From Podarcis muralis (taxonomy: Eukaryota): a stretch of 64,000 nt of DNA. Location: NCBI RefSeq assembly GCF_964188315.1, contig NC_135667.1, forward strand, positions 21,762,001 to 21,826,000, read 5' to 3'. Shown one piece after another: positions 17,001 through 63,841 of this stretch; positions within the stretch are counted from its first letter, which is position 1; every line of letters starts with the position of its first letter. Under the pieces are notes generated by a model. The model saw only the letters and a list, made by a program, of their open reading frames with translations. It ran no database searches and was not told the origin of the DNA. Both the position numbers and the translations under genes were made by a program.

Positions 17001-18922
17001 TTGCAACAAATTGGGGGAAACTAGGTATATTACTGGAGTGAATTTTGAAGGACAGTGTGCCATGGAATGATTCAGTTTCCCATGTTCTTTGATAGACCAA
17101 TGAAGTGAACTCCACTTGTGCTGTCATTATCCATACTGTACCTTTTGGATTCTCGCTCATGTGTTCGAGTTGTGATACATATGGAAACCATCTGAAAATG
17201 GTCATGAAATATGATTCTCCATAGGCTACCACTACATTGGCTTTGCTGGCAATTATGGTATCATGAATTTTTGCTCCCATTTCTAGCATATCATTAATTC
17301 CACTGACAAAATTAAAACTGGGGATTTTTTCTAGGAAAGCAAAGCAGATACCATTTTTGGAAAACAGGGGAACTACAATATGTGCAAATCTTTCTCCAAT
17401 GTCATTATTCATAACAATGCCCCCAATCCACGTCCATCTAAAATGCAGCAGCAAAGAGAGAATCCCCATGTATTGTTGGCCTTCCTGAGGTGCCATCTGG
17501 TAGAAGGAAAGGCCTGGAGTTTTATCATTCATCACAGGAGCAGAACCATAAATGAGCTAAGGAAGTATTCACAACAGGGGAGAAAGACAATAATAAGAAT
17601 GCCATTTTCAAATGTAGGGGAAAACCCCCAATCCACATTCAATTAATAGTTAGAACAACCATCTAAGAAAGGGAAATTTTATTGTTCCTGTGACACAGAA
17701 AGGAATCTAATATTCAGGAAATGGGAGCCAGTCTATTGTCATCCAGTGAGTTCAATGCATAATGGATAACTGCTGTTGACTCTAATGAAAAGAAATAGAC
17801 TTGAACTCAAATACCTTTGCTAGGACACTCCATTAGAATGGAGTTAAACAATTCTACATCTCACCTACCTCAAAAATGGTTGTTTTATCGATGGGGAAAG
17901 CTATATTCTAAGGTGTTTTATGAACATGGAAGCAAGTAGTCCCCCATCTGAAAGTAAGACAAATTTTGCACTACTCTGAAGACCCTGAAAGCCACTCACC
18001 TTTTCATGAGAAGGGAAGTCTGGTGACAGTGTGTGTGTAGGTCTGTCTGTATAAGCCCCTGTCCTACTCCACAGCCTATATTTTGATATCAAATGCAATT
18101 GGATCAGACAGCAAGAAGTATGAGGCAGTGAAAAGGTTGGTTTCATGCCCATCTCCAACATGTCCAGGTTCATAATAAATATAGATTCCCCTCCCACACT
18201 GTAGCCAAAGGGGTGAGCACTTTTTATTGCTGGTTGAACTTTTACACATGTTTGGTTCTCAGAGTGTGGACCTTGACATGCAGATAAAAGTTAATCCTTA
18301 TCTGATCAGCTGCAACATTTAGCTGCAATGAAAGTTCATGAAGAATGTCTTTCTCAGCCAGCACAAGACAGTCATAAATAAATATAAGATCTGTGCACCC
18401 ATTTCTGACCCCAATCAATGAAATGAAAACAGAAAGAAAAAAATTCCAATACTCCGCAAATAACCTACCTGTGGAATCTTATAGATATCCAAGATGGTTG
18501 CAATGTAAAGGGATACTTCAGAGTCCAGTCCTCCAATGACTGCTGTCAGACTATTCTGGACACCACATGTGAAATTGGGGACAAACCTGTCTAGAGTGGA
18601 TTGAAATAGCAGAGTGGCCTGAAAGGTCCACTTTGCACTTAAATAGCTATCATAGATGTGGAAACCCAAGGTGACATTGGGTAAGAGCTGTGAGTTTTCA
18701 TTGATTTCCTTCACCGCATACTCCAAGGCCAAGATGTGTTGGTAGTGCTTAGGCACAATGCTAGAATGAGAGATGGATTCTGTATCAGAAGGGTTTCCCT
18801 TATGTCGGTAAAAAAGAGATGAATGGAAGAAAGAAGTGGAAGAAAATGTAAAGAAGAAGAAGAAGTAACGTAGCTTTGAAAAGTGTGACTATGTGGAGTA
18901 AAGGGAGCTTCTTTTCTTCAAT

Positions 18923-27200: not shown

Positions 27201-30200
27201 CAGATCGTGAAGCTGAGGCTCCAAAACTTTGGCCACGTCATGAGAAGAGAAGACTCCCTGGAAAAGACCCTGATGTTGGGAAAGATGGAAGGCACAAGGA
27301 GAAGGGGATGACAAAGGACGAGATGGTTGGACAGTGTTCTCGAAGCTAGCAGCATGAGTTTGACCAAACTGCGGGAGGCAGTGGAAGACAGAAGTGCGTG
27401 GCGTACTCTGGTCCATGAGGTCACGAAGAGTCGGACACGACTAAACAACTAAACAACAACAACAACAAGCTGGAAATTGTGCTTTGGGCTGAACACTGCC
27501 CAAAGAAATTAAATGTGCAGATTTGAAGTGAATGTTCACTCAACATTTGAATACTTCCTTGTCTGCTAAACATTGTACCATACCTGGTTAAACCAGTTGT
27601 GCCATGTTATGCCTTCATCTCTGATAGTGAATGCTTGGTCAGCAATGCTCCCAACTTTCACAAGATGAAAGGACTGGTTTGAGTGCAGAATCCAGTTGAC
27701 AATATCCAATCCAGCTACTACCTCTCCATTCTCATTGAAGACTACTTTGTCCCCCACACTGTTGTTAAATGAAACACCTCTGAGAACGCGATGGAGCTAA
27801 ATTGAAAGAGAAAAGGTAAGACTTTAGAAAGGGCTGCATTGGGATCTTTCAGATTAAGGTTCAATGGCAGCAGCAAAACAACTTTGTATATTTGTGTGGG
27901 GAAAGGGTTATGGAAGACATGCTCATTCTTGATGATGAAGAGATTGCATGAAGGACTTGTACACGAATCTGCAAAAATTAGTACAATGTACATATAGTAA
28001 ATTAACAAACCACAAACATTAATAAAGAAAAGCAAATTGACATAGGGACTATTACCGTATATGCTGTCACATGTGGAAGGAAGAAGACAATAGTAGCAGA
28101 GTAAGAATTGGGAGAGAATACCATCCAATATACAGTGTGATGCCAAATGAAGGATTTTTAATTCAGTACCTGCCACAGCTGTTGATTTTGAAGCTTTGGT
28201 CCTCTTTCATCCACCATTCCTCTCCGTATGGGTATAGAATAGGACATGTCATGTAACGCATGGGCCACAGCATAGACAGCATTGTAGATGCTGTAGCTAT
28301 GACCAGTCATGGATAATTCAAAATAGGTTCCTGGAAGGCTTTCCATCTTCTCCCACCCTGTACAAATGTCTCCACTCACATTATCCACAACCACATTAGG
28401 GAACGTGCAGCCAAATGCCTGTTGCCAGAATGGCATTATAAAACTATCTCCTCTTCTGTTGGATGGGATTCTGCTTGCAACAAATTGGGGGAAACTAGGT
28501 ATATTACTGGAGTGAATTTTGAAGGACAGAGCTCCATGGAATGATTCGGTTTCCCAAGTTCTTTGATAGACCAATGAAGTGAACTCCACTTGTGCTGTCG
28601 TTATCCACACTGTACCTTTTGGATTTTCGCTCATGTGTTTGAGTTGGGATACATATGGAAACCATCTGAAAATGGTCATGGAATATGATTCTCCATAGGC
28701 TACCACTACATTGGCTTTGCTGGCAGTTATGGTATCATGAATTTTTGCTCCCATTTCTAGCATATCATTAATTCCACTGACAAAATTAAAACTGGGGATT
28801 TTTTCTAGGAAAGCAAAGCAGATACCATTCTTGGAAAACAGGGGAACTACAATATGTGCAAATCTTTCTCCGATGTCATTATTCATAAGAATGGCTCCAA
28901 TCCATGTCCATCTAAAATGCAGCAGCAAAGATAGAATCCCCATGTATTGTTGGCCTTCCGGAGGTGCCATCTGGTAGAAGGAAAGGCCTGGAGTTTTATC
29001 ATTCATCACAGGAGCAGAACCATAAATGAGCTAAGGAAGTATTCACAACAGGGGAGAAAGACAATAATAAGAATGTCATTTTCAAATGTAGGGGAAACCC
29101 CCAATCCACATTCAATTAATAGTTAGAACAACCATCTAAGAAAGGGAAATTTTATTGTTCCTGTGACACAGAAAGGAATCTAATATTCAGGAAATGGGAG
29201 CCAGTCTATTGTCATCTAGTGAGTGCAATGCTTAATGGATAACTGCTGTTGACTCTAATGTAAAGAAATAGACTTGAACTCAAATACCTTTGCTAGGACA
29301 CTCCATTATAATGGAGTTAAACAATTCTTCATCTCATTCCTCAAAAATGGCTGTTTCATCAATGGGGAAAGCTATATTCTAAGGTGTTTTATGAACTTGG
29401 AAGCAAGTAGTCCCCCATCTGAAAGTAAGACAAATTTTGCACTACTCTGAAGACCCTGAAAGCCACTCACCTTTTCATGAGAAGGGAAGTCTGGTGACAG
29501 TGTGTGTGTAGGTCTGTCTGTATAAGCCCCTGTCCTACTCCACAGCCTATATTTTGATATCAAATGCAATTGGCTCAGAGAGCAAGACGTATGAGGCAGT
29601 GAGAAGGTTGGTTTCATGCCCATCTCCAACATGTCAAGGTTCATAATAAATATAGATTCCCCTCCCACACTGTAGCCAAAGGGGTGAGCACTTTTTATTG
29701 CTGGTTGAACTTTTACACATGTTTGGTTCTCAGAGTGTGGACCTTGACATGCAGATAAAAAGTTAATCCTTATCTGATTAGCTGCAACATTCAGCTGCAA
29801 TGAAAGTTCATGAAGAATGTCTTTCTCAGCCAGCACAAGACAGTCATAAATAAATATAAGATCTGTGCACCTATTTCTGACCCCAATCAACGAAATGAAA
29901 ACAGAAAGAAAAAAATTCCAATACTCCACAAATAACCTACCTGTGGAATCTTATAGATATCCAAGATGGTTGCAATGTAAAGGGATACTTCAGAGTCCAG
30001 TCCTCCAATGACTGCTGTCAGACTATTCTGGACACCACATGTGAAATTGGGGACAAACCTGTCTAGAGTGGATTGAAATAGCAGAGTGGCCTGAAAGGTC
30101 CACTTTGCACTTAAATAGCTATCATAGATGTGGAAACCCAAGGTGACATTGGGTAAGAGCTGTGAGTTTTCATTGATTTCCTTCACCGCATACTCCAAGG

Positions 30201-30791
30201 CCAAGATGTGTTGGTAGTGCTTAGGCACAATGCTAGAATGAGAGATGGATTCTGTATCAGAAGGGTTTCCCTTATGTCGGTAAAAAAGAGATGAATGGAA
30301 GAAAGAAGTGGAAGAAAATGTAAAGAAGAAGAAGAAGTAACGTAGCTTTGAAAAGTGTGACTATGTGGAGTAAAGGGAGCTTCTTTTCTTCAATGTTAAT
30401 ATAATAATAATTATAATTTATTTGTATCCCGCCCTCCCCAGCTGAAGCTGAAATGTTACCATCATAACATTTTCTACAGCTCAAATGAATAACCGAGAGT
30501 TCTGCAAATCCAATACTTCATTATAATCTGATTATTCTGGTGGAAGAAAGGAAGAAAGAAAAGTCCTCACACAAGCTCTTCCAGTAATGCTGGAGGGGGT
30601 TCTTCAGTGAAGGTGAATGAGCTGGAGATGAAGCGAGCCTGAGAGACAATTCCACCAATGATAAGATCTCCTGGCTGATGGTACTTTTGAGGCGGAGGAT
30701 GAGGACTATGGACCCTGCATTGAACATTGCAAGCTTTGCATACCACGTGAGGAAGAAATACCAGCTGCAAGACCACTAAAATCGACTTCAT
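21287..30791 (-). CDS. V2R gene B, intact chimeric receptor, ~871 aa
   Basis: Exons 30571-30791, 29941-30232, 28170-29030, 27584-27796, 24637-24763, 21287-22188 (2616 nt, in frame, all GT-AG). Exons 1-3 are near-identical to gene A and exons 4-6 are near-identical to gene C. Confidence 0.92.
22274..22519. mobile_element. Tc1/mariner-pogo-type MITE
   Basis: TA-(C/G)AGTGGTACCTCGGGTT ... AACCCGAGGTGCCCCTG-TA; duplicated at 33686-33931. Confidence 0.8.
23282..23620 (+). mobile_element. CR1 LINE 3' end, 5'-truncated, absent from the duplicate unit
   Basis: ORF2 C-terminus ([44 protein letters not shown]) and an (ATTCTATG)n tail; the empty site CACATGGGCAAG is at ~34688-34699. Confidence 0.9.
23622..23905 (+). 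mobile_element. Old RTE-clade LINE 3' end (duplicate at ~34694-34975)
   Basis: C-terminal zinc-finger-like [16 protein letters not shown] and a ..GAGACAGATGAATGCCATCAACAAC tail. Confidence 0.55.
23954..24274. mobile_element. hAT-type MITE
   Basis: CAGGGGTCAGCAAC ... GTTGCCTACCCCTG, with an internal ~65-bp tandem duplication not seen in the copy at 35026-35277. Confidence 0.78.
25180..25700 (-). mobile_element. Possible old L1-like LINE ORF2 fragment (duplicate ~36150-36690)
   Basis: Remnant translation [19 protein letters not shown] resembles the post-RT region of squamate L1/Tx1; heavily degraded. Confidence 0.35.
25851..26229 (-). mobile_element. Sauria SINE, full length
   Basis: tRNA-related head (GGGACACGGGTGGTGCTGTGGTCTAAACC), core CATGCTGGCCACATGACC, BovB-like 3' end and an (ACCTTT) tail. 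Confidence 0.88.
26304..27466 (+). mobile_element. BovB (RTE) LINE, 5'-truncated with an internal deletion
   Basis: RT-region translation ([24 protein letters not shown]), (CAA)n tail and a degenerate 11-bp TSD AAACCGGAAAT / AAGCTGGAAAT; the empty site is at ~37293-37303. Confidence 0.92.
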
Positions 30792-32698: not shown

Positions 32699-35600
32699 TC
32701 ATTCTTTTCTTCTTATTAGCTGTTCCTTGTTGTTCAGCTCAGGTCTCAAAATAATAATGTAGCATTTGGGGGAAAAGATGCAGCCCAGCAAGCCAGCGCT
32801 GGAGGCTAAAATGGAAAAGATCTCCACAGCAACCATGTATTTTCCCTTGGTGCTCAGGTAGGTTGGAACAAAGGACACCCAAACACTGCAAAAAACCAAC
32901 ATGCTGAAAGTTATGAACTTGGCTTCGTTGAAACTGTCCGGCAACTTCCTGGCAAGGAATGCCACAATGAAACTGACAATGGCCAAGAAGCCCATGTAGC
33001 CAAGAACAGAGTAAAACAGAGTCACAGACCCCTCATTACATTCTAGTATAATTTCATCAGTCATTGAGTGCCTGTCAGCATCTGGGAATGGAGGAGAGGT
33101 TGCCAGCCATATAGTACAAATGCCTACTTGAATAACAGAGCAGGAAAGAACAATGGTGTTAGCTAGCTTTTTCCCCACCCACTTCCTCATCCTGGATCCT
33201 GGCCTGGTGGCCATGAATGCAAGAACCACTGTGATGGTTTTTGCCAAGACACAAGAAATAGCCACAGAGAAGACACTTCCAAAAACTGTTTGTCGCAGGA
33301 GACACGTCACCATCTCAGGTCGGCCAATGAACTGTAAAGCACACAGGAAGCAGAGCAAGAGGGAGATGAGGAGAATGTAGGTGAGGTCGCGGTTGTTGGC
33401 TTTGACGATGGGAGTGTCATGGTGCTTCATAAATGTTCCTAGGTTCAGAACTGTGAGCAAAGCAAAGGACAGAGAAAAACAAGCTAAACTGACCCCTAAT
33501 GGTTCTTCATAAGCCAAGAAGGTTACAGTCTTGGGAATACAGAAATCCTGGTTTTTGTTTGGATAGTTCCCATCTGTGCATTTCTGGCAGTCGTTCATAT
33601 CTGCAACATGAAAAAGGTTTTGTCTTACGCCATTAATCTTGTAAGAAATGGCAAAATCATTCCTCCAGGACCAATAAAAACCATGTACAGTGGTACCTCG
33701 GGTTACATACGCTTCAGGTTACATACGCTTCAGGTTACACACTCCGCTAAACCAGAAATAGTGCTTCAGGTTAAGAACTTTGCTTCAGGATAAGAACAGA
33801 AATCGGGCTCCTGTGACACGGCGGCAGCAGGAGGCCCCATTAGCTAAAGTGGTGCTTCAGGTTAAGAACAGTTTCAGGTTAAGAATGGACCTCCGGAACG
33901 AATTAAGTACTTAACCCGAGGTGCCACTGTATTCAAGTTACAGGATAAATTTAATGCTGATACTCTGCAATGTGGCAGCATCTGGGTATTTAAATCTGGA
34001 GGTTTTAAAGTCATTTAAACAGATATAAGTCCAACTTTTGGTTTAGGCATGAAGATGTAGTAAACCAGCTGTGATCATAGAGCCCTGCTAATGGTGACTG
34101 GAGTCCAATTATCATTAAACCTTCAACAAAAATTGACTGCATCAGTGTATTGGACACACAGCATGCTGGGTATAGCTGACCTCACAGTAGTTTTTAAAAA
34201 ATAAAATATGTGGCATTAACATACCTATAATTATTTATATAGCTGCCACAATATTAAACATGCATACAATATTGCAAATAATGATTGTACAACTGAGCAA
34301 GAATAATCTGTTGTGAATTAGTGGTAACAATGAGTATTCAGATCTTGCAAGCATAACATACGCTTCCTGAGCAGCCTATGCAGATGTAGGTGGACAAAAC
34401 AGTTGCAAAAAGCATATGGTTGCTGCAATTTTCTGTCATTGCATCAGTTGCAAAGATGACACCCTTCTCTTTTCTCAGTGTCAGCGGTGCTAGGTGCTAC
34501 TACTTCTGAGGGTGCCTTACTTGATGTTCAAGGGAATGTAGCTTTGTTTCTAGACTCAACCCAGTGCTTGATTTAGGGATCACAGAGGAGTTTTATTTAA
34601 TCTGCATTATGGAGTGAACCTGTGCATTCCATCCCTCCCAAAGCAATGTGCAGAAATGGATTATTCTGCATCTATGCAAACTGATGTGCACATGGGCAAG
34701 AGGTGGTCCAAAGATGGTCTTCTTTATTAACAGTTTACAGTAGGGACCAGAGGAGAAATGACCACTGGGGGGAGTGCAGAGAGAAGAAAGACCATGGTGC
34801 ATCTGTAGCAACAAAACCGGACTCCTTCATCTGCCCCATCTGCAGTAAAACATGTCTCTCCTGTATCAGTTTCTACAGCAACAGCAGGCACTGCAGCTCT
34901 TCAGTGGTTTGATGTCAACCCTGAAAGTACACTCTTTCATTCTCTCCTGAGACAGATGAATGCCATCAACAACAGTTGCTGCTTGGAGCACCAAGAAAAA
35001 CCCATGCTCCATGGTTGCTCTATGTCAGGGGTCAGCAACCTTTTTCACCCATGGGCCGGTCCACCGTCCCTCAGACCATGTGGTGGGCGGGACTATATTT
35101 TTTCTGGGGGTAAGTGAACAAATTCCTATGCCCCACATGTAACTCAGAGATGCATTTTAAATAAAAGGACACATTCTACTCTTGTAAAAACATACTGATT
35201 CCCAGACCGTCCATGGGCCAGATTGAGAAGGCAACTGGGCTGCATCCGGCCCATGGGCCTTAGGTTGCCTACCCCTGCTCTATGTCATAATATGCATAGT
35301 ATATGCACATATTTCATTTTAAACTGAATTGCCCCCCCCCAGTTCACACCATCATTGGCTGTTCAAGTGCCACTAGAATCGGAAACTGCCCCCCCGGCTA
35401 CTGTTTGATAAAGTATGTGGACATGTATGTGGAAACCATCTGCTCTTACATGGCCATATCACCTTTAATACATGTTTAATCATAAAGAATGATGTCCACC
35501 ATATATAGCAAAACTTATGTCCCAGAGTGCAGAAGAGTAATAACCTCACCCCCCCCCCTTTTTAAGCAGTTCTGTATACCTATTCCTCTGGATTATATTT

Positions 35601-38600
35601 GGTCTATTTGGTAAACCAGTAGAATATATTTTTTACCCTTCTGCTCTGAAATCTTCCCTTCTGGACATGGGATGCAATCATAGCAGCAGAATGGCTCCCC
35701 CTCCTTCACCTTCTTGCTGGACCCAGGGTGGCAACTCTCAGTACATATGGAAAGAGGCTGCGTCTAATCCAAATATGAAAGAGGAGAACAATGTTCAGAA
35801 TGAAGAGCTTGGAATCCTTAAATGTCCAGGAATTTTCCATATGCTTCCAAAGTGACAAGACTATTCTGTAATGTATGAATGGGCTCAAAGCTACAACCAT
35901 TTTCTTTTTCTACAAACAATTAATACGGTACAGCGTTATTCTTTTATTTATACCTACACAGACAACATATTGTAAAAACTGAACAGGTTTCTATAAATTT
36001 GGTCGCAATTTTGCTTCCTACACAGTAGTATGGTTTCACTATTGTTGCCATCTTTTTAAAAAGAATAATTCAGAGTTGGAATATCTTTTTTCTTCCACTT
36101 TTTTTACAAGATGACAGTGATTTTGTTCACTGCCATTTCCCTCCAAATTGACTCTTGTTTTAATGCATATACTGGGCACAGTATTTTCAACAAAATACAA
36201 CATCTTATTGAAAATATTTGTAACATGGTGGCAACAATCCTATTTTTCTCTGTTAAATCTCCAAATTATGAACTCCCTTCCCCCCTAATTAATGAAATGT
36301 GATCCCTGATTTCTCCTAAGAAATCTATTAGTTTTATTATAGAAGCCAGAGGGGAGATACCTGGACTTAATTTATTTTTATACTTATCCCATATTTCTAA
36401 TAATCGTGATAGTGTCACATTCTGCTTCAGAGCTTTTCCCCTCTATTTACCCCTTAGCAAATATTTCCAATGTAATAAAAACAATAAAAACAATCTATTA
36501 CAAGGGAATAGGAGAGGGAAATGCAGAAAACAGAGGTGAAACAACAGAATATATATATAGGGTGGGAAAATGGTATATTGAACATCATTCCAGAGGTTAT
36601 AATTAAATTGCCAGTTTTCACAATTATTATTGGAAGGAGTCCTTCAAGAGGATCTGATTAGTTTCTTTTAAATCACTTCTAAAGGGGAAATCTGGACTAT
36701 TATTTCATTATCTGCTTCTCTCAGTAAGCGTAGATGGAGCAGCAGGTACCACCCCTTCCCACAAGGAAATATTCAACATGGACCCACCGGATCAACTCTC
36801 CCTCACTTGATTTCACCAGCCATGATGGGAAGGGTTTGAGAGGACATGTTAAAAAAGGTAAAGGACCCCTGAGAGTTCAGTCCATTTGCGAATGACTCTG
36901 GGGTTGCGGCGCTCATCTCACTTTACTGGCCGAGGGAGCCGGCATTTGTCTGCAGACTGTTTTTCTGGGTCATGTGGCCAGCATGACTTAGCCACTTCTG
37001 GCACAACGGAACACTGAAACCAGAGCAGCGCACGGAAATGCCGTGTACCTTACCACCATATTGGTACCTATTTATCTACTTGCACTTTGACGTGCTTTCA
37101 AACTGCTAGGTTGGCAGCAGCAGGGACTGAGCAACGGGCACTCACCCCGTCACGGGGAGACAAACTGCCAACCTTCCGATCAGCAAGCCGAAGGCTCAGT
37201 GGTTTAGACCACAGCACCACCCATGTCCCCTTGAGAGGGCATGTAGTTAGACACATTTCTGCAAGCACCCTCTTCACATAATTAGGCCATATAAGCCGCA
37301 AATTGTGCTTTGGGCTGAACACTGCCCAAAGAAATTAAATGTACAGATTAGAAGTGAATGTTCACTCAACATTTGAATACTTCCTTGTCTGCTAAAAATT
37401 GTACCATGCCTGGTTAAACCAGTTGTGCCACGTTATGCCATCATCTCTGATAGTGAATGCTTGGTCGGCAATGCTCCCAACTTTCACAAGATGAAAGGAC
37501 TGGTTTGAGTGCAGAATCCAGTTGACAATATCCAATCCAGCTACTACCTCTCCATTCTCATTAAAGAATACTTTGTCCCCCACACTGTTGTTAAATGAAA
37601 CATCTCTGAGAACGCGATGGAGCTAAATTGAAAGAGAAAAGGTAAGACTTTAGAAAGGGCTGCATTGGGGTCTTTCAGATTAAGGTTCAATGGCAGCAGC
37701 AAAACAACTTTGTATATTTGTGTGGGAAAAGGGTTATGGAAGATATGCTCATTCGTGATGACAAAGAGATTGCATGAAGGACTTGTACATGAATCTGCAA
37801 AAATTAGTACAATGTACATATAGTAAATTAACAAACCACAAACATTAAAACAGAATAGCAGATTGACATAGGGACTATTATATTCTGTCAATGTGTAAGG
37901 AAGAAGAAAATGTTAGCACAGTAAGAATTGTGAGAAAAAACCATCCAATATACAGTGTGATGCCAAATGAAGGATTTTGAATCCAGTACCTGCCACAGCT
38001 GTTGATTTTGAAGCTTTGGTCCTCTTTCATCCACCATTCCTCTCTGTTTGGGTACAGATGAGGACATATCATGTAAAGCATGGGCCACAGCGTAGACAGC
38101 ATTGTAGATGCTGTAGCTGTGACCAGTCATGGTTAATTCAAAATAAGTTCCCGGAAGGCTCTCCATCTTCTCATGCCCTGTACAAATATCTCCATTTATA
38201 TTGTCCACAACAGTATTTGGAAACTCACACCCAAATGCCTGTTTCCAGAATGCTGTAATAAAACCATCTTCTGTTCTGCTAAATTGGATTCTTGCAACAA
38301 ATTGGGGGAAACTAGGTATATTACTGGAGTGAATTTTGAAGGACAGAGCTCCATGGAATAAATCTGTCTCCCAGTTTCTTTGATAGGCCAGTGAAGTGAA
38401 TTCCACTTGTGCTGTTGTTATCCATACTGTACCCTTTGGTTTATTTCTCATGTGTTCGAGCCCTGATATATATGGAAGCCATCTGAACATTGTCATGGAA
38501 TAAGATTCTCCATACGCCACCACAATGTTGGCTTTGCTGCTCATCACTTTATCATGTATTTTTGCCCCCTGATTTATCATGTCATTAGTTTCAGAGACAA

Positions 38601-39466
38601 AACTATAACCAGGGATTCTTTCTAGGAAGGCAAAACACACACCATTCTTGGAAAACAGAGGAACTACAATTTGCACGAATTTTTCACCATTGTCATTATC
38701 CATAACAACTAGCCCAATCCACGTCCACCTAAAATGCAGCAACAAAGAGAGAATCCCCATGTACTGTTGGCCTTCCTGAGGCGCCATCTGGTAGAAGGAA
38801 AGGCCTGGGGTCTTATCATTCATCATTGGAGCAGAACCATATATGAGCTAGGCAGGTATTAATAATGGGGGAGAAAGACAATAAAAAACATGCCACTTGC
38901 AAGTATTAAAAGGAATGCACATTAAATTAATAGTTATAACTATCCACCAAGATAAATGAATGTCTTTGTTTGCATGATAGAGATAGGAATTTAATATTTA
39001 GGTAGCAGGAGGCAGCCTATGGTCATCTAGTGAGTTCAAGGTGGGACAGAGATCTGCATTAGACTCCAGTGATAGAATAGATGTTGGAGAAAAGTAGAGA
39101 CCTGAATGAAAGGGTTATCCAGGAAGGGGACAGGGGAAGGTGTTAGAGTTCACAAGTACATTTTACATGGGATGGGTATTGATAGTGGAGGATAAGAAAA
39201 CCTCCTCACTGCCACACATGATTCTCTGAAGCGCGTCTTAAAACCACAGTTGCCTTGCTGGAAATGTTGCTCTTTGGGGGAAACTCAGGTGCCAAAATTT
39301 TCTCTTCTGCACTTTGAGAAAAATAGGGAGGAGAAGGTGAACTACAGAAATTTAAAAGCATATTTCCTATGGCCATTGAGATCTGGGATAAAATAGCCTC
39401 CTCACCTGCACACATAATTCTGAGAACCTCTGGTTTTTAGGGAATTGTAGGGGAAGGGCCATAGCT

Positions 39467-39510
<44 letters not shown>

Positions 39511-41876
39511 CTTTATTATTTATACCTTGCCCATCTGGCTGGGTTTCCCCAGCCACTCTGGGCAGCTCCCAATGGAATATTAAACAGAATAAAACTTCAA
39601 ACATCAAAAACTTCCCTATACAGGGCTGCCTTCAGATGTCTTCTACCCTGGTGATCAATGGGGTGACAGATGTTGCAGCCAGATCGCCCTCACATCCTCC
39701 TTCAGATGTCTTCTAAAAGACAGGTACAGTAGTTGTTTATTTCCTTGACATCTGCTGGGAGGGCGTTCCACAGGGCGGGTGCCACCACTGAGGAGGGCCT
39801 CTGCCTGGTTCCCTGTAACCTCACTTCTTTCAGTGAGGGAACCACCAGAAGGCCCTTGGCACTGGACCTTAGTGTTGGGGGTGAACGCTGGGGGTGCAGA
39901 CGCTCCTTTAGCTATACAGGGCCGAGACGGTTTGGGGCTTTAAAGGTCAGCACCAGCACTTTTAATTGTGCTCAGAAACATACTAGGAGCCAATGTAGGT
40001 CTTTCAGGACCAGTGTTATGTGGTCTTGGCGGTCACCAGTCTTGACGCCACATTCTGGATTTGTTGCAGTTTCCGGGTCACCTTCAAAGGTAGCCCCACG
40101 CAGAGCACATTGCAGTAGTCGAAGCAGGCGAGAACTGGAGCATGCACCACGCTGGCGAGACAATCTGCGGGCAGGTAGGGTCACAGCCTGCATACCATAT
40201 GGAGCCCTGGACACAGAATTGACCTGCGCCTCCATGGACACCTGTGAGTCCAAAATGACTCCCTGGTCCTTCAGGGGCACAGTTACCCCATTCAGGACCA
40301 GGGAGTCCTCCATACCCACCTTCCCCCTGTCCCCCCAAAATTGTACTTCTGTCTTGTCAGCATTCAACCTCAATCTGTTAGCCGTGCCTTGAAAGAGGGA
40401 AAGGGAAAATTATAGTTTATCAATACAGTCCTATCCATGTCTAATCAGAACTGAGAACCATGTGATGAGTAGGATTTGATAAAGGTAAAGGTAAAGGACA
40501 CCTGGATGATTCAGTCCAGTCCATCTAATAAAGAAAAAAACAGACTCCCCTCCCTTATTTTATAGCCAAGCAGGTAGGCACTTTGTTTGTTAAACATACA
40601 CAGGTTCAGTTTGGCTCTCAGAGTGTGTATCTAGGTATGTAGATAAAAAGTTCATTGATATCAGATGATCTGATCAGCAGGAACCAAGCTATGAAATGAA
40701 TGTTCATGAGGAATGTTTTTCATAGCCACCACAAGAAGGTCATAAATAAATATCTATATGAAAGCAGAAATAAATAAATATCTATATGAAAGCAGAAAGA
40801 AAAATGAAGTAGGTAGAATCCTATACTCCACTAAAAACATACCTGTGGAATCTTATAGATATCCAAGATTGTTGCAATGTAAAGGGAGATTTCGGAATCC
40901 AGTCCCCCAATGACTGCTGTCAGGCTATTCTGGACACCACACCTGTAATTGGGAACAAACCTGTCTGGATTTGATGTAAGCATCAAAGTAGCATGATAGG
41001 TCCACTTTGCACTTAAATAGCTGTCATAGATGTGGAAACCCAAGGTGACATTGGGTAAGAGCTGTGAGTTTTCATTGATTTCCTTCACTGCGTACTCCAA
41101 GGCCAGAATGTGTTGGTAGTTCTTAGGCACAATGCTAGAATGAGAGATGGATTGTGGATCAGAAGGGTTTCCCTTATGTAGTTAAAGAAAGAAACGACTG
41201 GAATAAAGGAGTGGATGTGGAAGGACAAAGAAAATTAATAAGGAAGAAGTAGGGTAGCTTTGAAAAGTGTGACCATTCTTTTAACATGTGGAGTAGAGAG
41301 CTTCTTTTCTTCAGTGTTCTCTTTATCATCTTAACATTTTCTACACCCCAAAGGAACAAGACAGTGATCTGCAGCTCCAATAATTTATTATACAGTGGTA
41401 CTTTGGGTTACAGAATCTTCAGGTTACAGACTCCGCTAACCCAGAAATAGTACCTCAGGTTAAGAACTTTGCTTCAGGATGAGAACAGCAGTCGTGTGGC
41501 AGCGGGAGGCCCCATTAGCTAAAGTGGTACCTCAGATTAAGAACAGTTTCAGGTTAAGAACAGACCTCCAGAACGAATTAGGTTCTTAACCTGAGGTACC
41601 ACTGTATTATGATTATCCTGGTGGAATAAAGCAAGATTATTTTTTTAAAAATCCTTACACAAGCTCTTCTGTTGAAGCTGGAGGGGGTTCTTCTTCGAAG
41701 ATGAATGAGTTGGAAACCAAGCGAGCCTGAGAAGCAATGCCACCAAGGATAAGGCTTCCGGACTTATGATACTTTTGAGGTGGCGGGTGGGGATTACGGT
41801 CCCTGCATTGAGCACTGTGAATGTCACATACCACATGAGGAAGAAGTATCAGCAGCAAGAACACTGCAACTGTCAT
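32699..41876 (-). CDS. V2R gene C, ~869 aa if the GC donor of exon 4 is used
   Basis: Exons 41659-41876, 40843-41134, 37990-38847, 37410-37622, 35637-35763, 32699-33600 (2610 nt, open). The exon 4 donor reads CAG|GCATGG, versus CAG|GTATGG in gene B. Confidence 0.85.
33686..33931. mobile_element. Tc1/mariner-pogo-type MITE (duplicate copy)
   Basis: TA-CAGTGGTACCTCGGGTT ... AACCCGAGGTGCCACTG-TA. Confidence 0.82.
35026..35277. mobile_element. hAT-type MITE (duplicate copy)
   Basis: Perfect 8-bp TSD CTCTATGT on both sides; termini CAGGGG / CCCCTG. Confidence 0.82.
36851..37229 (-). mobile_element. Sauria SINE (duplicate copy)
   Basis: Same element at the homologous position in the second unit. 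Confidence 0.88.
39467..40390 (-). mobile_element. L2 LINE 3' portion (ORF2 C-terminus, 3'UTR and (TTG)n tail)
   Basis: [44 protein letters not shown]; interrupted by the 7SK fragment. Confidence 0.78.
39646..39697 (-). pseudogene. RN7SK: 7SK snRNA 5' fragment (nt 1-52), tail-less retrocopy with 17-bp TSD
   Basis: The minus strand reads GGATGTGAGGGCGATCTGGCTGCAACATCTGTCACCCCATTGATCACCAGGG, which is 50/52 identical to the human 7SK 5' end as I recall it; both differences are CpG-type. It is flanked by the direct repeat CCTTCAGATGTCTTCTA at 39629-39645 and 39699-39715. Confidence 0.88.
41391..41606. mobile_element. Tc1/mariner-pogo-type MITE in intron 1 of gene C
   Basis: TA-CAGTGGTACTTTGGGTT ... 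AACCTGAGGTACCACTG-TA, the same family as 33686-33931. Confidence 0.8.
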
Positions 41877-44655: not shown

Positions 44656-47600
44656 TCATTTTTTAATTCTTATTAGTTGTTTCCTGTTATTTAGCTCAGG
44701 TCTAAACAAAATAATATAGCATTTGGGGGAAAAGAGGCAACTCAGCAATCCAGCACCAGAGGCTAAGATAGAGAAGATCTCCACAGCAACCATGTATTTC
44801 CCCTTGGCACTCAGGTAGGATGGAATAAAAGATAACCAAACACTGCAAAAGATCAACATGCTGAAAGTGATGAACTTGGCTTCATTGAAGCTGTCAGGTA
44901 ACTTTCTGGCAAGAAAAGCCACAATGAAACTCACAATTGCCAGGAAGCCCATGTAGCCAAGAACACAGTAAAACATAGTCACAGACCCCTCATTACATTC
45001 TAGTATAATTAGTTCAGTCACCGAGTGCATGTCAGCGTCTGGGAATGGGGGAGATGTTGCCAGCCACACAATACATATGCCTATTTGAAGAAGGGAGCAT
45101 GAAAAAACAATGGAACTGGTCAGTCTTTTCCCCACCCACTTCCTCATTCTGGATCCTGGTTTGGTGGTGATGAAAGCCAGAACCACAGTGATGGTTTTTG
45201 CCAGCACACTGGAAAGAGCAACTGAGAAGATGATTCCAAAAGCAGTTTGCCGAAGGAGACAAGTCACATTCTTAGGTTGGCCAATGAACAATAATGCACA
45301 AAAGAAGCAGAACAGAAGGTTGATGAGGAGAATGTAGGTGAGGATTCGGTTGTTGGCTTTGACAATGGGTGTGTTGTGGTTCTTCAGAAATGTTAGCAAT
45401 ACCAGTGCTGTGATCAAAGCAAAGAAAAGAGCCAGGAAGGCTAAACTGATGCCCAAAGGTTCTGCATAAGACAAGAAGTTTATGTCCTTGGGAATACACA
45501 CATCCTGGTTCTCACTAGGATAGTTTTCATCTGAGCATTTATTGCAGTCATTCATATCTGGGGGAAAAGGATGTGACTTGATTATCTGAGCTAATATACT
45601 TGTCATCAATTTCAACAGCATGCTGTGACTGCTCTCCTTACACAGATCCTTTGAAATAAGATTATACAGTTAATGTGGTGTGTAGGGGTGAGTATGACAG
45701 CTTAAGTTTTACATGGATCTAAAGTAGCATCTGACTGGGGTGAGGAATGCAGCAATGGAAACGATGTCATAAGCTATCTGGGATCAAAAACTTATGCTAA
45801 ATGTGGTAGTAATGTTATTCTTTAGGAAACTGCACTAGCTGTTTCAATAATCATTCGATAACTTAAAATTAAAAAATTAGCACTTGGAGTTGCATAATTT
45901 GATGTGCATATTCCTCTGGATTACAAGCCATTTTGCATTATAATTCAGTAGCCTTTGTGTTTGATCCAGACTAATTTAAATAGGCTTAAATGTATTTGAG
46001 AGCAATTTGTCAGACACGACTTAATTTCAATACCATTTATTCCTTTTCTCTTATTTTGGAAAGTTTTATTGAGAATTTTCACAATACATTACAATAAAAA
46101 ACTAACTAAACAAAACTAAAAACATAAAAAAGGAAAAAAAAAAACCAAATTCCTCTCTCAGAGGTATATCTTAACTCTTATCCCACACAGGAATCCTTGT
46201 ATGGAGGTCATTTTCATTTCCATGTGACGGTCTGCATCTATCAATTTGATTATTTCTTGATCCAGTCCTGCCAACTTTTCATCAATTTGATCTGGGCCCT
46301 CTGTTTATTCCCTGTTTCCATTTTCTATGTTGTATTTCTGTGGTTCATCATCTGGCTCATTTTCTTTATTTTCTTCATCTTCATCAAATATTATTTGATC
46401 ATTTTTAATTGTTCAGCCATCAGCTGCTGAACAATATCAACAGTTATTGGTTGATCCAAAAGTACCTTTACCATACTGGATATTTTCAATAACCTGGTTA
46501 TTATTAGCCTCTCAATCCTACTTAAGGCATCCTCCATAGGATCATAGTCCTGAGCTTCCTCAGCAGTGACTGTTATCTCAAAGCAAATTATTTTTCCTCA
46601 CAGTTTACAATAATCACTCCTCTTACCATATATTTCAAAGGAAACTAAGTACAATGAACTCTTACCCTCTTTGTTTGAAATCTTCCCCTCTGGACATGGG
46701 ATGCAATTGTAGCAGCAAAATGGCTCCCCCTCCTTCATTTTCTTGCTAGATCCAGGTTGACAACTCACAGTACATACAGAATGAGGCTGAGTCTAATACA
46801 TAAAGAGCAGAATAATGATAAGAGAACTATGATTAATTCAGGAATCCTTCTGGTTGTAGGTCATTTTCTATGGGGAATTACCTGGTATGATGTACCAGAC
46901 ATTGATAAAGCAACTTTAATTGGGCATTAGGAGAAAATGCTGATAATATCACAAATGTATTCACTTCAACTAGACAAAGCATTGCCACACAGTGAACATT
47001 TATAGAAACTACTTTTGGGGACTGATATTGAGGTGTTTGGGCAGTATTCTATATGATCAAGGTCACAAACTACAGTACAAGAAAGCAACCACAATATAAT
47101 TGTACACATATAACCCTGAAACACCTCAGAACTGCAATTCCTCAAGGACTGCCTCTCTCCATATGAACCTGTGATTGGCCAACCTTTTTGTATCAATACA
47201 AACACATTGATAGACATTAACCTTCTTTCAATGAAAAACCAGCTTTTCATAGGTGTGTGTGTGTGATCAAGTGCTCATTTAGAATTAGAATTCTTCAAAA
47301 TAGCTCACACAAGGGCCCTACCTGGTTAAACCAGCTGTGCCACATTATGGCATCTTCATCAATGGTAAATGCTTTGTCTGGAGGAGCCTGTGAATCCATC
47401 CTTCCAACCCTCACTCTAGTAAGGGAGTGGTTGGATGAAATAATCCAGTTGATAACGTCCAAGCCAAATACTACCTCGCCATTTTCACTGAAGGAGACCT
47501 CATCCCCTGCAGTGTTGTTAAAGGAGACACTTCTCAGAAAGTAGTGGAGCTAGAAGATGAAAGGAGGCATTCATAGAAGACTGCACTTTGATCTTTCATA

Positions 47601-50600
47601 TGATGATCAAACGTAAGGATGGTAAACCTGTTGCTCTGAAGGGATATTGACACAAAGGAAAACATTAAGGCATCATCTAATAATGAGCAAAGTCCCAAAC
47701 TAATGGTGGATGTTGAGAGAGGGCTTGTCCTCACTTCCTCTTGTTCCATGCCTCTGATTCAGCAGTAAACCATGAGTTTACCTGGGGGAAAGTAGTGAGG
47801 CAAACAGAAGTGTGGACAAACTCTGAGTCAGATGTGGGGTGGCCTCAGAGCCAAAAGCTGAGACAACAATTTTGTTCTTTCTCTTTTTGCTAGTCAGGAG
47901 TGGTGTTACTTGCTGATTCTTTTTGTAAGGAAACCAAGCACTTTTTATGTCATTAGGATTTATTTATTTTTTACAAAATCTTTGTTTTACTGCCTGCAGA
48001 TGGAGACTTGCTTACTGTAACTTCTGAAATTCTGAGTAAAATATTCACTTACTGTATTTGGAAAGCTAAGTGTCTGTAATTTATTCTGGTCTAAGTATTT
48101 TTGTAGGGAACATTTGTTTAAAGGTGAATGAGGGGAGATGTAAATCTAACCAAGTTTAATGTGCTTGGAACAATTGGCATTGTGCTAACTCTGCTATGAG
48201 GCAGTAAGAATCTCTCTTCCAAACCTCTCTCTTCAACAAGTGCCACAAATGTCCAGAATTTGGAAGTATCACAATATATCATAAACCAGCCAGGCCACCT
48301 TTAACTTCAATTCCTCCTGCCCTGCCTACAAAGTATAAATCCAGCACTGTTTTCCTCTTCTTGATGCACACAAAGAAAGCTGTGAAGCCAAGCAGCAAAG
48401 ACTAGATCTGCAACACTGAGGTAGCCCAGATGTTGGAAGGAAATAAGACCCAATTTCTGCCACTTGAGACTCTTCAACTCAGGAGTGCCAACATGAATAA
48501 AATATTGTGGGGACCCAGGTAAGCCCCACCCCACATAATCAATCTCATGAAGCAGTGCACACACACCATATGAATGAGAATGCTCATAAACTTTGCGGGG
48601 GCCCAGTCAAATATTTTATTGTGGGGACCAAAACCCCACAGCCCCTAGGAGTTGGCTCCTATGGTTCAACGTCTTACCTTCCAGAACTGCTGGCTCCAAT
48701 TCTTCTGTTTCCTTTTGTGCACCAGTCCTCTGTGTCTAAGCCAACCTGCAGACATCACATGTAAAGCATGGGCCACAGCATAAACAGCATTGTAGATACT
48801 ATAGCTATGACCTGTCATGCTCATTTCAAATAAGTCCCCAGGAAGGCTCTCCAGCTTTTCTTCCCCAGTGCAAATATCCCCCTCCATTTTATTATCCATT
48901 GAATCTGGGAATTCACAGCCAAAGGCCTGTTGCCAGAAGTCCCTGATAAAACCATCTCCATCTGTAATGGATGGATTTCGGCTCTTGACATATTGCTGAA
49001 ATCCTTCTACGTCATTCAAATGAATTGCAAAAGATAAAGTGCCATGGAACATATCTAAATTCAAATTCCTTTGAATGCTATATGCAATGAACATCATCTG
49101 GGCTGTTGTTATCCATACTTTTCCTTTTACACTCATAGCCACTTGTGTAATGCCCTTTAGATATGGAATCCACCTAAAAAATGCCATTGAGTAAGATTCT
49201 CCATAGAGCACCACAACATTAGCTTTACTAGCCATTATTTCATCATGCACTTTCCCCCCTTGTTCAAGAATATTATCTGAGTTACTGACAAAAGTAACTT
49301 TTGGGATTCTTCCTACAAAAGCAAAGCAGATACCACTGTTTGTAAACATTGGGAGTACAGTTTGAACAAATCTTTCTCCATTGTCATTATCCATCACAAC
49401 AACCCCAACCCATGTCCATTTGAAATGTAGAAGCAAAGAGAGGATCCCTGCAAACTGTTGGTGTTCCTGGGGGGCCATCTGGTAGAAGGAATATCCTGGG
49501 ATTTTATCACTCATCACTGGAGCAGGCCCATATGTGAGCTAAAGAGAGATCAGAGAAAGGTGATATAGATCCTATCATTTTACAGCAGATTCAACTATTT
49601 ACAGCCACTCACACACATTATTTCTGGAACTGTTTTCTAGTCTGATATCCAATTTAGTTAATCTCTCAGAGATTAACAAGTGATTAACAGGGTTTAAATT
49701 TCAGTGAATAGAGATAATGCTGGTAAAATTTCAATCTGGTCTCAATCTACCCCCCCAGTCAATACACACAACAGAATTTATACAGATGCACTCTCACTTT
49801 ATACCCCTTTCTTCATAACTCAGGTTGGGAACATTTATTACTGCAAAGAAAATGAGAGCTTTGCTATTTAGGAGGTGCTGACGCTTTTCTGATGTGGGCT
49901 TCATTTTTTCCAGGCGAAATCTGGTGGTTGCCACATGCCAGTGAAGCTGAAGCTAAAATTCAGTAGTTGTTGTTGTTGTTGTTTAGTCGTTTAGTCGTGT
50001 CCGACTCTTCGTGACCCCATGGACCAGAGCACACCAGGCACCTCTGTCCTCCACTACTTCCCGCAGTTTGGTCAGACTCATGCTGGTAACCTCGAAAACA
50101 CTATCCAACCATCTCGTCCTCTGTCGCCCCCTTCTCCTTGTGCCCTCCATCTTTCCCAGCATCAGTGTCTTCTCCAGGGAATCTTCTCTTCTCATGAGGT
50201 GGCCAAAGTACTGGAGCCTCAGCTTCACGATCTGTCCTTCCAGTGAGCACTCAGGGCTGATTTCCTTAAGAATGGATGCGTTTGATCTTCTTGCAGTCCA
50301 TGGGACTCTCAAGAGTCTTCTCCAGCACCATAATTCAAAAGCATCAATTCTTCGGCGATCAGCCTTCTTGATGGTCCAGCTCTCACTTCCATACATCACT
50401 ACTGGGAAAACCATGGCTTTAACTATACGGACCTTTGTTGGCAAGGTGACGTCTCTACTTCTCAAGATGCTGTCTAGGCCTGTCATTGCCCTTCTCCCAA
50501 GAAGGAGGCGTCTTTTAATTTCGTGGCTGCTGTCACCATCTGCAGTGATCATGGAGCCCAAGAAAGTAAAATCTCTCACTGCCTCCATTTCTTCCCCTTC

Positions 50601-53600
50601 TATTTGCCAGGAGGTGATGGGACCAGTGGCCATGATCTTCGTTTTTTTGATGTTGAGCTTCAGACCATATTTTGCGCTCTCCTCTTTCACCCTCATTAAA
50701 AGGTTCTTTAATTCCTCCTCACTTTCTGCCATCAAGGTTGTGTCATCTGCATATCTGAGGTTGTTGATATTTCTTCCGGCAATCTTAATTCCAGTTTGGG
50801 ATTCATCCAGCCCAGCCTTTCGCATGATGTATTCTGCATATAAATTAAATAAGCAGGGAGACAAAATACAGCCTTGTCGTACTTCTTTCCCAATTTTGAA
50901 CCAATCAGTTGTTCCATATCCAGTTCTAACTGTAGCTTCTTGTCCCACATAGAGATTTCTCAGGAGACAGATGAGGTGATCAGGCACTCCCATTTCTTTA
51001 AGAACTTGCCATAGTTTGCTGTGGTCGACACAGTCAAAGGCTTTTGCATAGTCAATGAAGCAGAAGTAGATGTCTTTCTGGAACTCTCTAGCTTTCTCCA
51101 TAATCCAGCGCATGTTTGCAATTTGGTCTCTGGTTCCTCTGCCTCTTCTAAATCCAGCTTGCACTTCTGTGAGTTCTCGATCCACATACTGCTTAAGCCT
51201 TCCTTGTAGAATTTTAAGCATAACCTTGCTAGCGTGTGAAATGAGTGCAATTGTGCGGTAGTTGGAGCATTCTTTGGCACTACCCTTCTTTGGGACTGGG
51301 ATGTAGACTGATCTTCTCCAATCTTCTGGCCACTGCTGAGTTTTCCAAATTTGCTGGCATATTGAGTGTAGCACCTTAACAGCATCATCTTTTAAAATTT
51401 TAAATAGTTCAGCTGGAATACCATCACTTCCCCTGGCCTTGTAGAACTGGAGTCAAATGTGTGTTGGGCAACTCCCCAAGCAAATCTCTTTGTGTCCTTC
51501 ATTTTTCTTCTCCTCGCTTCCTATCACCACTCCCCTCCATGTTACACATATGAAATCAGGGCAGCTGGAGAGGTATATTAGAAGTGCATTCTTGGCACCT
51601 GCAACCACTCCATCTCAGTAGTTTTTAAAATGCAAATTACATATTTGGGTGGGTAGGAGGAGATCTGGATCAGAAAAGTGGCATATAATTGGTAGGGGGT
51701 GTTTAACCCTATCATTGCATTGTGTTCCCATTCCAAAATTGTTGTTGTTGTTGTTGTTTAGTCGTTTAGTCGTGTCCGACTCTTCGTGACCCCATGGACC
51801 AGAGCACGCCAGGCACCTCTGTCCTCCACTACCTCCCACAGTTTGGTCAAACTCATGCTGGTAACCTCGAAAACACTATCCAACCATCTCGTACTCTGTT
51901 GCCCCCTTCTCCTTGTGCCCTCCATCTTTCCCAGCATCAGTGTCTTCTCCAGGGAGTCTTCTCTTCTCATGAGGTGGCCAAAGTACTGGAGCCTCAGCTT
52001 CACGATCTGTCCTTCCAGTGAGCACTCAGGGCTGATTTCCTTAAGAATGGATGCGTTTGATCTTCTTGCAGTCCATAGGACTCTCAAGAGTCTATTCCAA
52101 AATTAATGCACACCAAAATCTTGCATCGGAAAAAAACAATTATTTCAAAGCAAAGCAAGATCCCAAGTTTGGGTTGGGACCAAAGTGGATTTGTATGTGC
52201 AAGGAGTTAAAGCCTCCCTACCCTTCAAACCAAGGAACTGATCCAGATTAGCTGCCACAACTGCAAATTACATCAAAATGTTTATCATATTTACCTAGAG
52301 AGCTAATCATGCAATTTCTATTTATGTAGTTGTTATCCTGACTGATTTGGATCTCACATGTATCTAAGTTACCCTATTTTTGATGGGTTATGTCAGGGGA
52401 AATTACGGTACATTTTATAATGTGGGGTTCATTCCTTGACCTACGTATGTTCAGTCTGGGACTGGAATCAACCCAGAAATGCAGAATTTATTCAGAAGAT
52501 ACACGAGTGATTATTAAAAGGAATTCAACATGCAAAACATGCAAACAAAACACATTAACTTGGAGCATAAAAATTCTGAATAAGATGCTTATGGGAACAT
52601 GGTCTGTGACACTGCAGAGGTGGTGTAAATTTTCAAATCCATGACTGCTTATATAAATTTTAATATCAAAAATAATTTATCTCTCTACTTTCCCCCCAAA
52701 AGAGCCTAGGATACAAAACCCACAAACAGTAAAACACCTAAAAAAAGTTCTAAAAACAATTCCAATACAGAGGCAGGCTGCGTAACATCCACTGAAAAGG
52801 TTTGTGTGAAGAGGATCGCCTTAGGCACTGAAACAGCAACAGGGACTGTTTTTGCCTAATATTTAATGCTCCTTCAGGGGAAAAATAAACTGAACCAAAG
52901 CAGGCAATAGATCAATTAAATGGACTTGGGGACCCTTCCCCAAGGTGCCTCCATCTTGCTAGGATTCAGAATCAGTTCGTTAGCCCTCATCTAGCGCACC
53001 ATTGAGTCCAGGCTTGCACAATATCTAGTGATTTAATATTGCAGTGAAATAGCGTACTGATGACTTCCAGTCTAAATCTTCTAATGACCACACTCAATGG
53101 CTTCATAGAGGTGTTAAATGACATGTGGCATTTGATGATGCCCTGTGGCACCCCTTACAGCACAACTGCCCAATGTTTTTCTCTGAAAGCAACCCTGCAG
53201 ATAGGATCACAACTAGTGTCTACAATTAACTAAGTTGATTCAGAAGGACCATATGGTTAATGGTATGAAAGTTCATTGAGAAATCAAGTCAGTCACATTC
53301 TCCTATCAACTCCCCGTAAACATCATCCACCAGGACAACCAAAGATGATTCAGTTTCGTAACCTGACCTGAACCCAGATTGAAATTGGTCAAGATAATTG
53401 GTTTTATGGAACAGTACTTGCAATTGTTGCACATCAAACCTTTCAATCAGCTTCCTTAAAATGTGATTTGTGCAACTGGGAGCTGTTTGTCACAAACCAA
53501 TGAACATCAAAACCTGTCTTATATTAAAGACCAACTAGCAGTCTGAGTTTGCCTAGTTCTGAATACCAATTATATCTTACAAACTTCCTGTTCCCAATCC

Positions 53601-63791: not shown

Positions 63792-63841
<50 letters not shown>

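What the first reader, a model, noticed from the sequence alone, without database searches (positions are those of the whole stretch)
39629..39715. Tail-less 7SK snRNA retrocopy (nt 1-52) with a perfect 17-bp TSD nested in an L2 element
Seen: a 53-nt insert between two copies of CCTTCAGATGTCTTCTA interrupts an L2 3'UTR; the uninterrupted version is visible at ~11455-11480. On the minus strand the insert is the exact 5' end of 7SK, with no poly(A). Known: 3'-truncated tail-less retropseudogenes of structured small RNAs are described mainly from mammals and attributed to LINE machinery priming internally. Inference: the cut after nt 52 lies in the apical loop of the 7SK 5' hairpin, and the TSD starts TAGA against 7SK's next bases UUGA, which suggests microhomology-primed reverse transcription by a squamate LINE.
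Basis: partly seen in the sequence, partly recalled or inferred. Interest (0 to 1): 0.72.

Follow-up and report, generated by a model that had tools for sequence, protein, structure and literature searches.

The report
Tail-less 7SK RNA retrocopy in lizard
A 52-base copy of the start of the 7SK small nuclear RNA, flanked by a 17-base target duplication and lacking a poly(A) tail, was pasted by LINE retrotransposon machinery into an older repeat inside an intron of a lizard vomeronasal-receptor gene; it is a real but ordinary member of the published class of "tailless retropseudogenes".

Summary
A perfect 17-nt direct repeat (39629-39645 and 39699-39715) brackets 53 nt. On the minus strand, 39646-39697 matches Rfam 7SK (RF00100) positions 1-52 at 36.3 bits (gathering score 35), E 1.9e-8. 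There is one extra base before nt 1 and no A-run. Two other copies of the host repeat in the window carry the 17-mer once, so they serve as paralogous empty sites.

The cut falls in the hairpin loop of the 7SK 5' stem-loop in the Rfam consensus structure. The nick site reads as an L1-type TT/AGAA. This fits the tailless retropseudogenes of Schmitz 2004 and Noll 2015. Noll reports 139 7SK-derived copies in human and finds the class in the green anole as well.

Not established:
- The host being L2. It is a non-LTR retroposon 3' end with a variable microsatellite tail, and its clade is untested.
- The microhomology idea. It rests on 3 of 4 bases, about 5% by chance, in one case.

The site lies in an intron of a V2R-type receptor gene and no function is expected. 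The scan holds four other unchecked 7SK notes in this genome, on other DNA.

Interest is low: a new member of a known kind.

The parts
39646..39697 (-). 7SK snRNA nt 1-52 (retrocopy body); 50/52 to the Rfam consensus, differences at nt 24 and 46 both CpG to CpA
   Evidence: Rfam RF00100, 36.3 bits, E 1.9e-8, model 1-52; sequence read
39698..39698 (-). one extra base (A in the 7SK sense) between the upstream duplication copy and 7SK nt 1; probably untemplated addition at the 5' junction (inference)
   Evidence: direct reading; not part of the Rfam alignment
39699..39715 (.). target-site duplication, the copy upstream of the insert in the 7SK sense
   Evidence: the repeat finder D1, 100% identity
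39629..39645 (.). target-site duplication, the copy downstream of the insert in the 7SK sense; its 3' end on the + strand is the inferred primer for reverse transcription; its last base could instead be a copy of 7SK U53 (1-nt ambiguity)
   Evidence: the repeat finder D1; Rfam alignment runs into it, UAGA against UUGA
39511..39628 (-). host repeat, 3' part (sense inferred as minus strand), left of the insertion
   Evidence: aligns with 11350-11468 and 63667-63795 (minus), mean column identity 89%; blastn
39716..39874 (-). host repeat, right of the insertion (may extend towards about 40385-40535, unverified)
   Evidence: aligns with 63508-63676 (minus) and, up to its 5' truncation, with 11459-11510
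39466..39510 (-). (AAC)n microsatellite, the 3' tail of the host repeat; other copies end in different microsatellites
   Evidence: (AAC)n here, (ATG)n at about 11330-11350, (TAA)n at about 63790-63840
40831..41130 (-). upstream exon of the V2R-type receptor gene whose intron holds the insertion
   Evidence: Pfam ANF_receptor profile 4-78, E 3.9e-10
37888..38826 (-). downstream exon of the same gene
   Evidence: Pfam ANF_receptor profile 95-316, E 4.3e-23

Best explanation
This is a tailless, 3'-truncated retropseudogene of 7SK snRNA. A LINE endonuclease/reverse transcriptase, most likely of a relaxed L1-type element, nicked the + strand of an existing retroposon copy at a T-rich/A-rich site (TT/AGAA in the 7SK sense). 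It used the freed 3' end to start reverse transcription inside the apical loop of the 7SK 5' stem-loop, at nt 52/53, rather than on a poly(A) tail. It copied the RNA to its true 5' end and added one extra base. A second nick 16-17 nt away produced the target-site duplication. Shown here: the 7SK identity and extent, the missing tail, the duplication, the paralogous empty sites and the loop position. Inferred: the enzyme clade, internal priming as opposed to a pre-cut RNA, and the strand and order of the nicks. The copy lacks the external Pol III promoter and 279 of the 331 nt of 7SK, and it lies in an intron, so it is very probably inert.
For: 7SK positions 1-52, starting exactly at nt 1, at 36.3 bits and E 1.9e-8. 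This is the pattern of an RNA intermediate, not a DNA copy of a gene with its promoter. A perfect 17-nt duplication flanks the insert directly, with no A-run, against about 0.003 expected by chance. Two uninterrupted copies of the host repeat carry the 17-mer once in the same context. The cut lies in hairpin-loop positions 49-59 of the Rfam consensus structure, matching Noll et al. 2015, who find that tailless copies end at defined positions coinciding with internal single-stranded regions, argue for internal priming, list 139 7SK-derived copies in human, and find the class in the green anole. The nick site read from the sequence is a one-substitution variant of the L1 consensus TT/AAAA (established knowledge of L1 endonuclease). 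A follow-up in this same genome classed a U2 5' fragment with an 11-nt duplication the same way.
Against: No L1 element was seen in the window. The only RT ORF (49983-51374) is a non-L1 LINE, so the enzyme is assigned from the literature and the nick motif alone. Lizards carry several active LINE clades (Noll 2015). Two of three CpGs have decayed, yet there is no change in about 80 non-CpG positions (the 7SK body plus both duplication copies). That is in mild tension, with a rough joint probability of a few percent by my own estimate, and could mean the source RNA already carried A at nt 24 and 46.
Confidence: 0.76

Rival explanations
1. Same retroposition, but the template was a 7SK fragment already cut in the apical loop (nuclease or degradation product) and reverse-transcribed from its 3' end, not an intact 7SK primed internally.
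For: The end lies in a single-stranded loop, where nucleases also cut. The sequence alone cannot separate the two. Microhomology at the junction is weak, 3 of 4, p about 0.05.
Against: For 5S and U2, Noll et al. 2015 looked for polyadenylated truncated forms and for matching small-RNA 3' ends and found none, and they concluded internal priming. That is human data, not tested here.
Confidence: 0.12
2. The 7SK piece entered the host repeat elsewhere, in a source copy or in a segment later duplicated, and this locus is a secondary copy. The '17-nt duplication' would then be an inherited internal feature of a repeat subfamily or of a duplicated V2R segment.
For: An unchecked first-stage note on another piece of this genome (s1-153079) describes an 88-letter tailless 7SK copy with a 17-bp duplication inside a repeat, almost the same layout as this 87-letter one. 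V2R clusters duplicate often (inference).
Against: The two other host copies in the window lack the insert. The neighbouring paralogous V2R introns lack the whole 1.45-kb block. The duplication is perfect while host copies differ by about 11-30%. This host copy is an ordinary intronic copy, not an obvious source element.
Confidence: 0.06
3. Template-switch chimera: while the host repeat's own RNA was being reverse-transcribed, the enzyme jumped to 7SK at nt 52, ran to its 5' end, and jumped back 17 nt downstream on the host RNA.
For: The 7SK piece and the host repeat lie in the same orientation. LINE chimeras with small RNAs, 7SK included, are known in mammals (10.1101/2025.02.02.635956). Another first-stage note in this genome describes a 7SK/LINE chimera (s1-188892).
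Against: Known chimeras join the small RNA to the 5' end of the LINE copy inside one duplication; they do not sit mid-element. A return jump re-copying exactly 17 nt has no supporting homology at the junction. The duplication starts at an L1-type nick motif, which this model does not predict.
Confidence: 0.04
4. Assembly artefact or chance resemblance.
For: No reads could be laid on the site.
Against: A 50/52 match to 7SK starting exactly at nt 1 and a perfect flanking 17-mer are not chance. Contigs from 14 DNA runs of 4 studies hold about half or more (0.47-0.67) of the sampled words of 39200-40200, though that does not address the insert itself.
Confidence: 0.02

Closest known systems
Tailless retropseudogenes (Schmitz et al. 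2004; Noll et al. 2015, PMC5322556)
   Same: 5'-complete copy of a structured small RNA, 3'-truncated in a single-stranded region, no oligo(A), flanking target-site duplication within the 8-30 nt range, L1-type nick motif. 7SK is a listed source RNA (139 human copies). The class was detected in a lizard (green anole: 8 5S and 63 U2 copies).
   Different: Human 7SK copies end almost always around nt 230-248; only 4 of 139 are under 100 nt (45, 45, 56, 71). This one ends at nt 52/53. In the main text, the tables I read and a word search of the supplementary files held as text, I found no 7SK-derived copies listed for the lizard.
Classical L1-mediated 7SK / small-RNA processed pseudogenes and U6/L1-type chimeras
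   Same: Same presumed enzyme, target-primed reverse transcription and duplications.
   Different: No poly(A) tail, no attached LINE 3' piece inside the same duplication, and internal rather than 3'-end priming.
Functional 7SK snRNA gene (Rfam RF00100)
   Same: The first 52 nt are 96% identical to the family consensus.
   Different: It holds 52 of 331 nt and lacks the 3' side of the 5' stem-loop, the 3' hairpin and any upstream promoter context. Whole-window scans at gathering score find no 7SK.

Membership tests
Tailless retropseudogene | Derived from a cellular small RNA and starting at its first nucleotide | tested here: met
   Rfam 7SK model position 1 aligns to 39697; one extra base precedes it
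Tailless retropseudogene | 3'-truncated, with no oligo(A) tail at the truncation | tested here: met
   Model positions 1-52 only; nt 52 abuts the duplication directly
Tailless retropseudogene | Discernible flanking target-site duplication | tested here: met
   Perfect 17 nt (16 if the ambiguous base is counted as 7SK U53); single copy in paralogous host repeats
Tailless retropseudogene | Truncation point in an internal single-stranded region of the source RNA | tested here: met
   Rfam consensus structure marks positions 49-59 as hairpin loop. The structure is the family consensus, not this species' own 7SK
Tailless retropseudogene | L1-type endonuclease nick site and dependence on a relaxed L1 | tested here: inconclusive
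   The site reads TT/AGAA in the insert's sense, a one-substitution variant of TT/AAAA. No L1 is in the window; the resident RT ORF is non-L1. Enzyme dependence is not testable here
Tailless retropseudogene | Empty orthologous or allelic site (presence/absence) | not testable with these tools
7SK snRNA gene (RF00100) | Full-length RNA of about 331 nt reaching the gathering score in an ordinary scan | tested here: not met
   No hit in whole-window scans. Only a model-truncated match of 52 nt in a short stretch
   Host ORFs 39733-40392 (+) and 39972-40373 (-) have no Pfam family and only unnamed chordate look-alikes. No repeat library is on hand. Variable microsatellite tails and a 5'-truncated copy fit a stringent-type LINE or SINE 3' end and exclude L1, which ends in poly-A in all vertebrates (PMC5381506)
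SINE (host element, alternative) | tRNA-, 5S- or 7SL-derived head | tested here: not met
   No Rfam match at E up to 1 and no ARAGORN tRNA in 39701-40600. The 5' end of the host may be truncated, so this does not exclude a SINE

The most novel reading that the evidence does not exclude
Nt 52/53 in the apical loop of the 7SK 5' stem-loop is a recurrent, lizard-specific internal priming hotspot, used at several independent loci. The other 7SK notes in this genome, one with an almost identical 88-letter layout, would be examples. The contrast with the human hotspot near nt 240 would show that lizard L1 particles engage 7SK differently from mammalian ones.
Probability: 0.25. Interest if true: 0.4.

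Novelty: new member of a known kind. Interest (0 to 1): 0.2.

Why it matters
By itself it matters little: an inert intronic retrocopy. As a data point, it adds a 7SK-derived example to the few tailless retropseudogenes recorded outside mammals. It also supports the published idea that lizards have a relaxed, L1-type retroposition system that can prime inside structured RNAs. Its endpoint differs from the dominant human one. If a genome-wide count showed a shared endpoint, such copies could be used to compare template choice between lizard and mammalian L1, and as clean presence/absence markers in squamate phylogeny.

Tried and rejected
There is therefore no read support, no test for an empty allele, and no look at the species' own 7SK letters.
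(2) Whole-window Rfam scans did not list the fragment. Only the short-stretch scan did.
(3) The search of earlier findings by sequence and by place gave nothing. By words it gave titles only, so the endpoints and flanks of the other 7SK notes could not be compared.
(4) Naming the host repeat failed. Pfam found no family, the Atlas gave only unnamed chordate clusters, and Rfam and ARAGORN found no RNA-derived head. I ran no further search on this side issue.
(5) The resident RT ORF at 49983-51374 was considered as the responsible enzyme and set aside. It is not L1-clade and shares nothing with the host repeat.
(6) Other direct-repeat pairs with similar spacing (24062/24133, 33761/33852) were checked as possible further retrocopies. 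They are tandem duplications with no significant RNA-family match.
(7) The Bov-B 'Tn-TA' split insertion signature (PMC13295347) was considered. Here the T-run abuts the duplication instead of lying about 10 nt upstream, so it does not fit.

Full report
**What is there.** The + strand carries a perfect 17-nt direct repeat at 39629-39645 and 39699-39715, with 53 nt between the copies. From the window's base composition, about 0.003 perfect 17-nt direct repeats within 500 nt are expected in the whole window. A permissive Rfam scan of 39560-39790 puts 7SK RNA (RF00100) on the minus strand. Model positions 1-52 align to 39697-39646 at 36.3 bits (gathering score 35), E 1.9e-8. Fifty of the 52 positions equal the family consensus. 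The two differences, at nt 24 and nt 46, both turn a CpG into CpA. One extra base (39698) lies between the duplication and 7SK nt 1. There is no A-run at the other end, where nt 52 abuts the duplication. Whole-window Rfam scans did not report the piece. I take this as a consequence of how Infernal treats model-truncated matches away from the ends of a stretch, which is inference.

**The host and the empty sites.** The insert interrupts a repeat that occurs twice more in the window. One copy is at 11355-11510, at 83-86% identity and ending early. The other is at 63508-63840 on the minus strand, at about 78-84% on either side of the site. Alignments made strictly beside the insert show both copies running straight through the site with a single copy of the 17-mer. 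These serve as paralogous empty sites.

Each copy ends at the same point in a different microsatellite: (AAC)n here, (ATG)n at about 11340, (TAA)n at about 63800. One copy is truncated at the far end. This is the pattern of a non-LTR retroposon 3' end whose sense is the minus strand at this locus (inference). L1 is excluded, because L1 ends in a poly-A tail in all vertebrates examined, lizard included (PMC5381506). I could not show that the host is L2:
- Its open frames have no Pfam family.
- They have only unnamed chordate look-alikes in the Atlas.
- Right of the insert there is no tRNA-, 5S- or 7SL-like head.

**Genomic context.** The window is a tandem array of class-C GPCR genes (ANF_receptor plus 7tm_3, the V2R vomeronasal type), all on the minus strand. 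The insertion lies in the intron between the exons at 40831-41130 and 37888-38826, on the same strand as the gene. The paralogous introns of two neighbouring genes match up to 39081 and again from 40536, and they lack the 1.45 kb in between. The order of events is therefore gene duplication, then arrival of the host repeat, then arrival of the 7SK piece.

**How it most likely arose.** The copy begins at the true first nucleotide of 7SK and carries no promoter, which points to an RNA intermediate. The duplication points to staggered nicks, that is, target-primed reverse transcription. Read in the 7SK sense, the target is T-run/AGAAGA.

The first base of the duplication could equally be a copy of 7SK U53, so two parses are valid:
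- nt 1-52 with a 17-nt duplication;
- nt 1-53 with a 16-nt duplication and a nick at TT/AGAA, a one-substitution variant of the L1 consensus TT/AAAA (sequence reading plus established knowledge of L1 endonuclease).

The Rfam consensus structure marks positions 49-59 as the hairpin loop of the 5' stem-loop, so reverse transcription began in a single-stranded loop.

All this matches the tailless retropseudogenes of Schmitz 2004 and Noll 2015 (PMC5322556):
- The authors favour internal priming by the L1 machinery.
- 7SK is the source of 139 human copies.
- The green anole is the only non-mammal in which they found the class (8 5S and 63 U2 copies).

The split 'Tn-TA' signature of reptilian Bov-B (PMC13295347) does not fit this site.

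**The microhomology claim.** The Rfam alignment shows the same 3-of-4 match. The chance of at least 3 of 4 is about 0.05, there is one case, and under the alternative parse the primer's terminal base is mismatched. The idea is possible but not established.

**Age.** The duplication copies are identical and the 7SK body shows no non-CpG change, so the insertion is much younger than its host copy. Two of three CpGs have changed. By my rough estimate this is only marginally compatible with zero changes at about 80 other positions. The source RNA may therefore already have carried A at those two positions. This is inference, because the species' own 7SK could not be read.

**What could not be done.** Scripts masked them and alignments stopped at 39640 and restarted at 39701. 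As a result there is no read-level support for the junctions, no test for an empty allele or an orthologous empty site, and no view of this lizard's own 7SK. Contigs from 14 DNA runs in four studies of the same organism hold about half or more (0.47-0.67) of the sampled words of 39200-40200. That shows the locus exists in several samples but says nothing about the insert.

**Relation to earlier notes of the scan.** Four unchecked first-stage notes describe other 7SK fragments on other DNA of this genome. One is 88 letters with a 17-bp duplication inside a repeat, nearly the layout seen here. I could not read it. It may be an independent insertion with the same endpoint, which would make nt 52/53 a hotspot. 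It may instead be a duplicated copy of this very event, which would make this locus secondary. A follow-up on a U2 5' fragment in the same genome reached the same class assignment as I do here.

**Comparison with human.** In Noll's list, 135 of 139 human 7SK tailless copies span about 199-270 nt, most of them 230-248. Only four are shorter than 100 nt: 45, 45, 56 and 71. The endpoint here is thus a minor type in human.

**Verdict.** This is a real feature, correctly read by the first stage, and an ordinary member of a published class. The host's 'L2' label and the microhomology mechanism remain open. No function is expected. Interest is 0.2, and the novelty class is a new member of a known kind.

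Noticed in passing
window 14019-62469, minus strand: Tandem array of at least five class-C GPCR (V2R vomeronasal-type) genes. 7tm_3 exons are at 14019-14954, 21287-22186, 32699-33598, 44656-45621 and 58116-59060. Large ANF_receptor exons are at 16684-17535, 28158-29009, 37888-38826, 48666-49517 and 60679-61677.
   Followed up: partly
window 49983-51374, minus strand: A 463-aa open frame with a reverse-transcriptase domain (RVT_1, E 5e-40). It matches human L1 ORF2p no better than R2 (77 against 71 bits), so it is a non-L1 LINE fragment, lying next to a V2R exon.
   Followed up: partly
window 39081-40536: A block of about 1.45 kb that is absent from the paralogous introns of two neighbouring V2R genes (17410-18825, 28884-30297). 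It holds the host repeat and a local 100-nt duplication (39132-39230 / 39329-39426, 67%).
   Followed up: partly
window 24062-24200 and 33761-33870: Short tandem duplications: a 71-nt unit with a 28-nt perfect core, and an 18-nt repeat 91 nt apart. There is no significant Rfam match, and they are not retrocopies.
   Followed up: yes
   Followed up: no
window 10849-10927, minus strand: Weak match to the mir-9168 precursor family (33 bits against a gathering score of 100, E 0.007 for the window); most likely chance or a repeat hairpin.
   Followed up: no
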